Source: Saccostrea cucullata | Lineage: Eukaryota | Assembly: GCF_032062105.1 (NCBI RefSeq) | Contig: NW_026929305.1 | Span: 248,001 to 312,000 of the forward strand | Length of the DNA stretch: 64,000 nt | Direction of reading: 5' to 3' | In this document: positions 48,913 through 50,884 of the stretch, piece by piece | Position numbering within the stretch: the stretch's first letter is position 1 | How the letters are laid out: each line of letters starts with the position of its first letter | Notes under the pieces: generated by a model | Database searches by the model: none | The model's input: the letters and a program-made list of their open reading frames with translations, nothing else | What the model was told of the DNA's origin: nothing | Program-made: the position numbers and the translations under genes

Positions 48913-49872
48913 AATTAAACCCGACCGCGACCCGGGTAAAGCAGTGTGGTCGCTAACAAGCATTGCATGACAATTAAACCCGACCGCGACCCGGGTAAAG
49001 CAGTGTGGTCGCTAACAAGTAAAGCAAGACAATTAAACCCGACCGCGACCCGGGTAAAGCAGTGTGGTCGCTAACAAGCATTGCAGGACAATTAAACCCG
49101 ACCGCGACCCGGGTAAAGCAGTGTGGTCGCTAACAAGCATAGCAAGACAATTGGAGGACAATTAAACCCGACCGCGACCCGGGTAAAGCAGTGTGGTCGC
49201 TAACAAGCAAAGCAAGAAAATTAAACCCGACCGCGACCCGGGTAAAGCAGTGTGGTCGCTAACATAGCAATAAATTGGAGGACAAATTAAACCCGACCGC
49301 GACCCGGGTAAAGCAGTGTGGTCGCGACCCGGGTAAAGCAGTGTGGTCGCAATTGCAGGACAAATAAACCCGACCGCGACCCGGGTAAAGCAGTGTGGTC
49401 GCTAACAAGAATTGCAGGACAAATAAACCCGACCGCGACCCGGGTAAAGCAGTGTGGTCGCTAATATAAATTGCAGGACAAATAAACCCGACCGCGACCC
49501 GGGTAAAGCAGTGTGGTCGCTAATATAAATTGCAGGACAAATAAACCCGACCGCGACCCGGGTAAAGCAGTGTGGTCGCTAATATAAATTGCTTGACAAA
49601 TAAACCCGACCGCGACCCGGGTAAAGCAGTGTGGTCGCTAATATAAATTGCAGGACAAATAAACCCGACCGCGACCCGGGTAAAGCAGTGTGGTCGCTAA
49701 CAAGAATTGCAGGACAAATAAACCCGACCGCGACCCGGGTAAAGCAGTGTGGTCGCTAACAAGTAAAGCAAGACAATTAAACCCGACCGCGACCCGGGTA
49801 AAGCAGTGTGGTCGCAAATATTCATTGAAGCAAAAATGAGCCCGACCGCGACCTGGGCATACTTATGGTCGC
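48913..49872 (+). repeat. 59-bp tandem array: 15 full copies, 1 partial and 1 diverged copy of an invariant pseudoknot-forming core
   Basis: Core taaacccgaccgcgacccgggtaaagcagtgtggtcgc is invariant; linkers are variable but mutually related; another diverged copy at 50045-50080. Confidence 0.95.
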
Positions 49873-50884
49873 TGATTACTATTGCAATTTACTTGCCCTA
49901 AAAGGTCTAGTGATGCAAATGTCGTGGTTTTCGGGACCATATTCAAAACCCGATTATTTTGGGAACCCGGTTATAATTATATATTGGGAATTGTTTGTAA
50001 TGTAATTTATTTTGCTTGCATTTTATTGTAGTAAATCACAAATGAGTCCGACTGCGACTCGGACTAGCTGTGATAGTCCCCGTTATCTTTTGCTTTTTAC
50101 ATGACTTGAAGGTCTAGTGATGTAAATATCTTCATTTTCCGAACATTGTTCAAAAAGACATTATACTGGTATTGTTCTCTATTATACCATACCTCAATTG
50201 TATTTGTTCCAATGCTTTCGAGTCATTTGTATATATTGTAATGAAAGATACTGTTTTTTTTCTTCAATTTTAATGTATTGAGATGAAGTATTAGTGGATA
50301 ACATGTATATAATATTTTTCATAGACATTTTGTTGTAACAGTCACCGTGGAATCTAATTATGGCACCATTTAAGTCATGTGTAATAAAAATTTTAATTTA
50401 ATCTTAACATGTTAAAACCGTTTTAATACAAAGTATATTGTTCTTGAAATATTTCAAAAATTACACATGGCTTAAATATATGGCTGGCGTCCCCGTCGCG
50501 GTGCTGGGCGTCACACCTTCACACCAATTCCTTTAAACAGAAGAAAGTCTTTCATTTTAAATACTTCCAGCATCATTTGTATGCGCAAATCATTTTTTCC
50601 CTGGTTTAAAAGTGTGAATGTGTGATGGCAAATAGCCAATTTGTCCCGGTGGACTGGAAAAAAAAATTTGCACTATTTGTGAGAATACAACGCAAAAGGT
50701 ATTTTAATACGAAATACAGTCCTATTTTGTCAAAAGGTTATAATAGTTAACTTGTAAACCGAGGAGGGGGAATATAAATTAAGGGGGAAAAAACGAAGAA
50801 AAAAAAATTGGTATGTATGCGTATTAAAATACCTTAAGAATATATTTCTACGCAGTATTGTTAAAATAACTTCTTTTCCAGATA

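What the first reader, a model, noticed from the sequence alone, without database searches (positions are those of the whole stretch)
48913..50080. Tandem array of H-type pseudoknots with compensatory changes in both stems
Seen: each 59-bp unit has an invariant core that parses as S1 ACCCG, L1 ACC, S2 GCGACC, S1' CGGGT, L3 AAAGCAGTGT, S2' GGTCGC, while the linkers vary. The diverged copy at 49840-49872 reads GCCCG/TGGGC in S1 (A-T to G-C swap plus a G-U wobble) with a different L3. The copy at 50045-50080 reads AGTCCG/CGGACT in S1 and GCGACT/AGTCCC in S2 (C-G to T-A swaps in both stems, one mismatch). Inference: structure rather than sequence is being maintained, on the + strand. Possible roles are a multivalent ncRNA (protein scaffold or decoy, exonuclease block) or an ssDNA structure used by the Rep during rolling-circle transposition.
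Basis: partly seen in the sequence, partly recalled or inferred. Interest (0 to 1): 0.85.

Follow-up and report, generated by a model that had tools for sequence, protein, structure and literature searches.

The report
Transposon carrying borrowed rDNA signals
The repeated RNA knot is a copy of a small structure from the oyster's own ribosomal RNA precursor, and the rolling-circle transposon that carries it also holds matches to the start and the end of the host's ribosomal transcription unit plus self-cutting RNAs, which suggests it has its genes read by the polymerase normally reserved for ribosomal RNA.

Summary
In detail: 15 identical H-type pseudoknot cores, one partial copy and two diverged copies. 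Across 38 distinct units from two named Saccostrea species and one rDNA, both stems covary (7 of 13 pairs change on both sides, 2.1 expected; S2 98.7% paired). The same pseudoknot occurs singly in the host's rDNA ITS1 (27 nt identical to some units; flanks unrelated), and strong model hits in the genome fall almost only in rDNA and this Helentron family. The family also carries a 5'ETS-derived leader (E=3e-12, same spacing) and, at its 3' end, hairpin+oligo-T units matching those 280 nt after 28S. So rDNA spacer signals lie in native order, with transposon genes in place of the rRNAs, bracketed by HDV-like ribozymes and an A-tract hammerhead. Best reading (0.6): a captured Pol I transcription cassette processed by ribozymes, with the pseudoknot acting in RNA, most likely as a nuclease roadblock (0.35). 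A Rep/ssDNA role is unlikely. No transcript was shown, and splice-acceptor-like sites before both ORFs argue for Pol II. An earlier scan note had the ribozymes on this window; the rDNA link appeared in no note or paper I searched.

The parts
48919..49815 (+). Tandem array: 15 identical H-type pseudoknot cores plus one partial unit, A-rich variable linkers; homologous to the single pseudoknot in host rDNA ITS1
49839..49872 (+). Diverged pseudoknot copy (S1 changed on both sides, shorter L3)
50044..50080 (+). Second diverged copy, in an old ~205-bp duplication with the previous one; both stems changed on both sides, one mismatch
48846..48877 (+). Match to the beginning of the rDNA 5'ETS-like block (514 nt before 18S in rDNA); candidate Pol I start region. 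The window has lost the ~400 nt of ETS-like leader that related copies keep between this motif and the first pseudoknot
   Evidence: (window hit alone E=0.02; family profile to rDNA E=2.8e-12)
48437..48534 (+). tRNA-like unit 1 (A box, B box, T5 after it); no ARAGORN call
48583..48668 (+). tRNA-like unit 2 (A box, B box); no T4 run follows until ~49884 in this copy, but most related copies have T5 directly behind the unit
50362..50638 (+). HDV-like ribozyme with long J1/2 and P4 inserts: predicted cut 50361/50362, P1 GGCACC/GGTGCT, P3 GCG/CGC, L3 TCCCCGT, P1.1, candidate catalytic C 50629, P2 closing at 50633-50638
   Evidence: P2 and P4 covary; the descriptor gave no other hit in the window or nine other loci
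50885..51316 (+). ORF1, 143-aa coiled-coil protein specific to this family; preceded by a pyrimidine tract and CAG
51844..58623 (+). Helentron Rep-helicase ORF, 2259 aa (OTU, DUF6570, Rep, PIF1, endonuclease)
58915..59033 (+). Genomic A-tract fused to a type III hammerhead ribozyme (cut after 58987)
59180..59220 (+). Hairpin with GG-TNCG-CC loop followed by oligo-T; same motif as the repeats after 28S in rDNA; candidate Pol I terminator
59645..60134 (+). Tandem array (50-bp unit) of the same hairpin+oligo-T motif
46438..46588 (+). 150-nt block conserved at 87-90% in all copies that reach it; function unknown
42947..60841 (+). Probable extent of the Helentron (left subterminal repeat plus inverted repeat; right subterminal repeat plus palindrome)
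   Evidence: same order in L063

Best explanation
An ancestor of this rock-oyster Helentron lineage acquired the signals of an rDNA transcription unit: the start of the 5'ETS, the ITS1 pseudoknot and the hairpin+T repeats that follow 28S. The rRNA coding regions are absent and the transposon's genes stand where 5.8S-28S would be (shown by sequence). The cassette is most likely read by RNA polymerase I from the ETS-like start to the hairpin+T array (inferred). The HDV-like ribozyme cuts off the ETS-pseudoknot leader, a second one separates ORF1 from Rep-helicase in most copies, and the hammerhead leaves a DNA-encoded poly(A) at the 3' end, so no Pol II-coupled end processing is needed (folds shown by covariation, activity inferred). 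The pseudoknot acts in the nascent RNA as it does in ITS1. Its most likely job (0.35 among roles) is a roadblock to the nuclear 5'-3' exonuclease Xrn2, which in mammals degrades uncapped and cut Pol I transcripts and trims ITS1; tandem copies add redundancy. Next most likely: a binding site for an ITS1-recognising assembly factor (0.25), a 3'-5' block that stabilises the released leader (0.15), an aid to elongation (0.1). The 15-copy run in this window is a recent expansion in a copy that has lost most of the ETS-like leader.
For: Pseudoknot pattern: 54 hits, all in this family or in rDNA-type contigs, 0 for the reversed control; covariance-model hits below E 1e-3 add only two unread places. 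In rDNA it lies 189 nt after 18S and ends ~200 nt before 5.8S; three ITS1 variants differ in L3 only. 7 of 13 pairs change on both sides vs 2.1 shuffled, 0/500. ETS block: E=2.8e-12 over 150 nt, 65-70% identity, hairpins kept by compensatory changes; a second 16-17-nt exact block lies 396 nt downstream both in rDNA and in three elements; start motif: 28 of 29 genome hits on contigs already known as rDNA or this family, or reading as the rDNA variant. 3' hairpin+T motif: only after 28S (+287, +469) and at element 3' ends in 0.9 Mb scanned, 0 in 2.55 Mb shuffled, and in nearly every element genome-wide. Same order of parts in 13 elements, which form one clade by Rep-helicase. HDV-like and hammerhead folds covary. 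A putative 5'ETS of 500-581 nt in mussels fits the 514-nt distance (PMC6730533). Xrn2 roles: PMC3061060. R2 precedent for HDV release from a Pol I cotranscript: PMC3414825.
Against: No transcript shown: only three runs guessed to be RNA, with two short low-depth contigs over the start motif and array. Both ATGs follow a pyrimidine tract and CAG, as spliced Pol II genes do. Upstream of the start motif similarity to rDNA is weak and ends within ~30 nt, and the oyster Pol I start has not been mapped. The middle of the ETS-like leader is not significantly similar to rDNA (p 0.06 and 0.65). The window has lost most of the leader and has only one HDV-like ribozyme. How an uncapped 5'-OH RNA would be translated is unexplained. 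The fold lacks the conserved scaffold of known xrRNA classes (PMC12397905). Covariation counts are inflated by relatedness among units.
Confidence: 0.6

Rival explanations
1. The rDNA-derived pieces are functional RNA or DNA signals but the polymerase is Pol II or Pol III: for instance the tRNA-like box drives a leader RNA that mimics pre-rRNA (nucleolar decoy, scaffold or localisation signal), while the ORFs are spliced Pol II genes trimmed by ribozymes.
For: A/B-box units 250-300 nt before the ETS-like start in 12 of 13 elements; no T4 run across the window's array; T4/T5 just behind the last pseudoknot in several copies; acceptor-like sites before both ORFs; one contig begins at the ORF1 acceptor.
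Against: Most copies have T5 directly after the tRNA-like unit and further T4 runs at chance frequency inside the leader. Does not explain why post-28S hairpin+T repeats are kept at the 3' end.
Confidence: 0.22
2. Neutral captured rDNA fragments, amplified as the central tandem repeats that Helentrons commonly carry; apparent covariation is inheritance from a structured ITS1 ancestor or repeated re-capture and gene conversion.
For: Helitrons capture host DNA (established knowledge); oyster Helentrons carry satellite-like arrays (PMC7492417); the 15 window cores are identical, a recent expansion; some units have broken pairs.
Against: Changes on both sides arose inside the transposon (several S1 and S2 variants absent from ITS1); stems 93% identical to ITS1 with flanks at chance level; three rDNA signals kept in order across elements whose Rep-helicases differ by about 0.7 changes per site.
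Confidence: 0.08
3. The units fold in single-stranded DNA and are used by the Rep protein during rolling-circle transposition.
For: Helentrons pass through ssDNA; G.T wobbles can form in DNA; strand bias by distinct substitution type is modest (6 vs 4).
Against: The unit is an ITS1 RNA structure among ribozymes that need a 2'-OH; terminal Rep signals are far away; sister elements lack the unit.
Confidence: 0.04
4. Reverse direction: the rDNA spacers got these motifs from the transposon.
For: It has been proposed that rDNA spacers are filled with transposon remnants (bioRxiv 10.1101/2023.02.20.529178). ITS1 of non-Saccostrea oysters could not be read here.
Against: Three motifs sit at three separate rDNA positions (before 18S, in ITS1, after 28S) in the same order as in the element; one capture from rDNA is far simpler than three insertions. 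Mytilus sister elements lack the oyster-type motifs.
Confidence: 0.03

Closest known systems
R2 retrotransposons and their SIDEs (PMC3414825)
   Same: Expression by release from a Pol I-type transcript through a 5' HDV-like ribozyme with a long J1/2; uncapped RNA.
   Different: R2 must insert in 28S and uses the host unit's promoter. This is a DNA (rolling-circle) element at dispersed sites with its own ETS-like start, ITS1 pseudoknots and post-28S hairpins, plus a 3' hammerhead behind a templated A-tract.
Helentron / HINE central tandem repeats of oysters (PMC7492417)
   Same: Helentron Rep-helicase-endonuclease, subterminal repeats and palindrome, internal tandem arrays that expand and contract.
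   Different: The repeat unit is a conserved RNA structure of rDNA origin; that paper mentions neither rDNA nor ribozymes.
Viral xrRNAs, classes 1-3 (PMC12397905)
   Same: Compact pseudoknot, often duplicated in tandem (own knowledge for flaviviruses), proposed here to stop a 5'-3' exonuclease.
   Different: No three-way junction and no P1-P2 stem-loop with the L2B T-loop network; a plain 40-nt H-type fold; nuclear and host-derived; resistance untested.
Pol I-transcribed protein genes of trypanosomes (VSG, procyclin) and Pokey DNA transposons in 28S (own knowledge, not checked here)
   Same: Protein-coding RNA from Pol I; a DNA transposon tied to rDNA.
   Different: Trypanosomes cap by trans-splicing and use dedicated promoters; Pokey inserts into rDNA and does not carry rDNA signals away.
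Classical H-type pseudoknots (frameshift stimulators, T4 gene 32 leader; own knowledge)
   Same: Topology: S1 5-7 bp, L1 3 nt, S2 6 bp, no L2, A-rich L3.
   Different: Not in a reading frame, no slippery site; no Rfam match.

Membership tests
H-type pseudoknot | Two interleaved stems, both supported by covariation | tested here: met
   4 pairs in S1 and 3 in S2 change on both sides; slid controls 21-45% paired; alternative register unsupported
H-type pseudoknot | More stable than the best nested fold | tested here: inconclusive
   stem sums -23 to -26 kcal/mol, about -14 to -19 after an assumed loop penalty of 7-9.6, vs -10 to -15 nested; rough estimate, no pseudoknot-aware program available
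H-type pseudoknot | Fold shown by probing | not testable with these tools
   needs SHAPE/DMS
Helentron | Rep + PIF1 helicase with C-terminal endonuclease | tested here: met
Helentron | Subterminal inverted repeats and 3' palindrome | tested here: met
   ~42947 and ~60790-60841; shared with an abundant non-autonomous family, so exact ends are probable, not proven
rDNA (Pol I) transcription unit | 5'ETS, ITS1 and post-28S sequences in native order and strand | tested here: met
rDNA (Pol I) transcription unit | 18S, 5.8S, 28S coding regions | tested here: not met
   no Rfam hit in the window; no match to rRNA genes. It is not an rDNA unit or pseudogene array, only its spacer signals
rDNA (Pol I) transcription unit | Upstream promoter elements like the host's | tested here: inconclusive
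   weak similarity to about -30 only; host start site unmapped
rDNA (Pol I) transcription unit | Transcribed by Pol I | not testable with these tools
   searches give contigs only
xrRNA class 1/2 | Three-way junction with double pseudoknot | tested here: not met
   two stems only; definition from PMC12397905
xrRNA class 3 | P1-P2 stem-loop with J1/2 bulge and L2B T-loop network | tested here: not met
   S1 is a single helix with a 9-nt loop; not a member, but may still work as a block
xrRNA (any) | Stops Xrn1/Xrn2 | not testable with these tools
   needs in vitro assay
HDV-like ribozyme (array unit itself) | P3/L3, P1.1 and J4/2 with catalytic C | tested here: not met
   S2 5' strand abuts S1 3' strand, no room for P3. 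The unit is not a ribozyme
HDV-like ribozyme (50362-50638) | P1, P1.1, P2, P3, P4, J4/2 C in the right order with covariation | tested here: met
   P1 has 6 bp instead of the usual 7; cleavage untested; no Rfam hit, probably because of the long inserts
Hammerhead type III (58981-59033) | CUGANGA and GAAA core, NUH site, stems I-III | tested here: met
Pol III (SINE-like) long transcript | A/B boxes with no T4+ run to the end of the array | tested here: inconclusive
   met in the window, not met in the 12 other copies checked

The most novel reading that the evidence does not exclude
A eukaryotic DNA transposon carries a portable RNA polymerase I expression cassette taken from its host's rDNA (start, ITS1 nuclease roadblock in tandem, terminator), makes protein-coding RNA from it outside the rDNA array, and forms both ends with its own ribozymes; and the ITS1 pseudoknot is a cellular exonuclease-resistant RNA that functions in oyster pre-rRNA processing.
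Probability: 0.3. Interest if true: 0.95.

Novelty: categorically new. Interest (0 to 1): 0.86.

Why it matters
Transposons are normally read by Pol II or Pol III, or, like R2, ride on an rDNA unit they insert into. A mobile element that keeps the working signals of an rDNA unit would be a natural Pol I protein-expression system in an animal, a possible way around Pol II-centred silencing, and a natural deletion map of which spacer elements matter for pre-rRNA: what the transposon kept for a long time (first 125 nt of the ETS block, one 16-nt ETS motif, the ITS1 pseudoknot, the post-28S hairpins) are direct candidates for the unmapped promoter, processing and termination signals of mollusc rDNA. 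The 40-nt pseudoknot is easy to test as a host-encoded exonuclease block. The label 'categorically new' refers to the cassette; the element is a Helentron and the fold is an ordinary H-type pseudoknot.

Tried and rejected
Rfam gave nothing for the unit or the leader. The unit as an HDV-like, twister or hammerhead ribozyme: core elements absent. Alternative pairing of the 3' strand with the first GACC: no covariation. Long Pol III read-through as a family trait: T runs inside the leader of other copies. Short ORFs starting at the diverged units: not kept between the two copies. Viral contigs: six pattern hits in 64-74% GC phage DNA, five without S1, treated as chance. Metagenome scan for oyster ITS: nothing; the second scan was not used. 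Distant relatives (Mytilus L061, L064; L062; Haliotis L076) show no oyster-type pseudoknot or ETS block; their own hosts' rDNA was not available, so a host-matched leader there is not excluded. Ten literature searches found no description of rDNA-derived signals or of this ribozyme set in Helitrons; subscription papers and Repbase reports are not covered.

Full report
Observation. Fifteen identical 35-nt cores start between 48919 and 49781, mostly 59 bp apart, with variable A-rich linkers, one partial unit and two diverged copies at 49840 and 50045. The stems and substitutions read as described. One unit alone proves little: its nested fold is average and two-stem patterns occur by chance.

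Setting. The array lies 1 kb upstream of a 143-aa ORF and a 2259-aa Helentron Rep-helicase with OTU and endonuclease domains. The closest named relatives are from Saccostrea cucullata (61%, on a contig with the length of one in this assembly) and S. echinata (63%), so the host is a rock oyster. Probable element ends are near 42947 and 60841.

Homologous units. A pattern search of the genome gave 54 hits and none for the reversed control. They fall into two groups. One is arrays of 3-6 diverged units in about a dozen related Helentrons; the S. echinata element has them too, as do Logan contigs of unidentified origin. On 38 distinct units, 93.9% of cells pair, 7 of 13 pairs change on both sides against 2.1 in shuffles, and S2 is 98.7% paired with its one-sided changes all to G.U. 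The competing register shows no signal. Units are related, so the counts overstate independence; still, several different double changes occur in both stems.

Origin. The second group is the host's rDNA. One copy of the pseudoknot sits in ITS1, 189 nt after 18S and ending about 200 nt before 5.8S. Some transposon units match it over 27 nt exactly; on average stems and L1 are 93% identical and the 30-nt flanks 25-30%. Three ITS1 variants differ only in L3. A covariance model finds almost nothing else in 1.17 Gb.

Two more rDNA signals. A profile of the transposon leaders matches rDNA 514 nt before 18S at E=2.8e-12 over 150 nt, with hairpins kept through compensatory changes. A second exact block lies 396 nt further on in rDNA and in three elements, 421-433 nt in others; the stretch between is not significantly similar. 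The window keeps only the first ~30 nt of this leader, at 48846, 70 nt before the first pseudoknot. At the far end, the hairpin+oligo-T units at 59180 and 59645-60134 have the same loop, stem length and T run as repeats 287 and 469 nt after the 28S end. Single alignments are weak (E 0.09-1.8), but the motif occurs nowhere else in 0.9 Mb, never in 2.55 Mb of shuffles, and genome-wide mainly on rDNA and element contigs. No rRNA coding sequence is present.

Ribozymes. About 100 nt after the last pseudoknot (480-550 in the window) begins an HDV-like fold with long inserts, repeated before Rep-helicase in most copies; P2 and P4 covary. A type III hammerhead follows a genomic A-tract after Rep-helicase in the window and in S. 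echinata, and its core lies 7-10 kb downstream of the array in most copies. I found these before consulting earlier notes; note s1-730915 had already described them. Thirteen elements share the order tRNA-like unit, ETS-like start, pseudoknots, HDV cut, ORF1 (one lacks the tRNA-like unit). The three Rep-helicases with this leader form a clade, sister to Mytilus elements that have an HDV-like core but no oyster-type leader.

Mechanism. Shown: three rDNA spacer signals in native order and strand, selection on the pseudoknot's pairs and sequence, two ribozyme folds. Inferred: transcription by Pol I from the ETS-like start to the hairpin+T array; removal of the leader by the HDV-like cut; a templated poly(A) end by the hammerhead. 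An R2-like past, in which an element inside an rDNA unit left with the flanking signals, would explain the order, but this is conjecture. For the pseudoknot I favour an Xrn2 roadblock: in mouse, Xrn2 degrades abortive Pol I transcripts and cut 5'ETS pieces and trims ITS1 from sites 139-164 nt before 5.8S (PMC3061060), and the oyster pseudoknot lies just upstream of the equivalent distance, where a block would protect the large-subunit precursor until the proper cut. The same position fits a 3'-5' trimming stop or a protein site, and nascent folding is known to help Pol I elongation (PMC7427326). The unit fails the structural tests for known xrRNA classes (PMC12397905), which lowers membership, not the possible function.

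Against. No transcript is shown; three runs only guessed to be RNA give two short contigs over the start motif and array. Acceptor-like sites precede both ATGs. Promoter similarity upstream of the start motif is weak, the host start is unmapped, and translation of an uncapped RNA is unexplained. A Pol III leader is possible in the window, where no T4 run interrupts the array, but not in most copies.

Verdict. Real feature; structure conserved at RNA level with probability about 0.9; rDNA origin about 0.95; Pol I cassette 0.6; roadblock role 0.35. I found no description of this arrangement in ten searches of the open literature or in the scan's notes. Limits: ITS1 was read only from Saccostrea-type sequences; two contigs were withheld and left alone; two model hits were not read.

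Noticed in passing
L057:2297-2340 and L057:2775-2820 (rDNA): ITS1 carries, directly before the pseudoknot, a ~45-nt near-copy of a motif at the start of ITS2; in L071 this ITS1 motif is duplicated.
   Followed up: no
window 46438-46588: 150-nt block 87-90% identical across all element copies that reach it, 1-2 kb upstream of the tRNA-like unit; folds into a multi-branch structure; no Rfam match.
   Followed up: partly
window 48437-48668; L036-L063: tRNA-like units with conserved A/B boxes and acceptor-like ends but highly variable anticodon arms; ARAGORN calls only the L045 copy (anticodon TTA, 'tRNA-Stop').
   Followed up: partly
L061:6872-7290 and L064 ~8080-8420 (Mytilus edulis): Sister Helentrons have an HDV-like core (same P1 GGCACC/GGTGCC, L3 and P1.1); P2 and J4/2 not confirmed. 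Upstream lie a ~120-bp tandem repeat and a long TATG microsatellite.
   Followed up: partly
L063:15110-15270 (S. echinata): Two further, degenerate hammerhead copies downstream of the first.
   Followed up: no
window 50363-50480: The J1/2 insert of the HDV-like ribozyme is closed by a 13-bp stem that covaries between copies.
   Followed up: partly
L036 ~5165-5085 and L045 ~6610-6530: A tRNA-related sequence on the opposite strand just outside the conserved 150-nt block.
   Followed up: no
window 27616-32607 (-): Intact-looking Gypsy-type gag-pol ORF (1663 aa) with repeats at ~27100 and ~33070 that suggest LTRs.
   Followed up: no
window 35042-35956 (+): 304-aa intronless ORF matching Pfam HtrL_YibB (E 1.8e-48), a family described as bacterial.
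   Followed up: no
L046-L049 (C6683, C22649, C5241, C13500): Distant ORF1 homologues (28-29%) without pseudoknots, ETS block or HDV-like fold.
   Followed up: partly
G000 C22012:5032-5074 and C1354:87438-87479: Two further covariance-model hits (E 1.7e-6, 1.2e-4) whose context could not be read.
   Followed up: no
L060:2935-3540: rDNA intergenic spacer has ~60-bp subrepeats ending ~180 nt before the ETS-like start motif; no counterpart in the transposon.
   Followed up: partly
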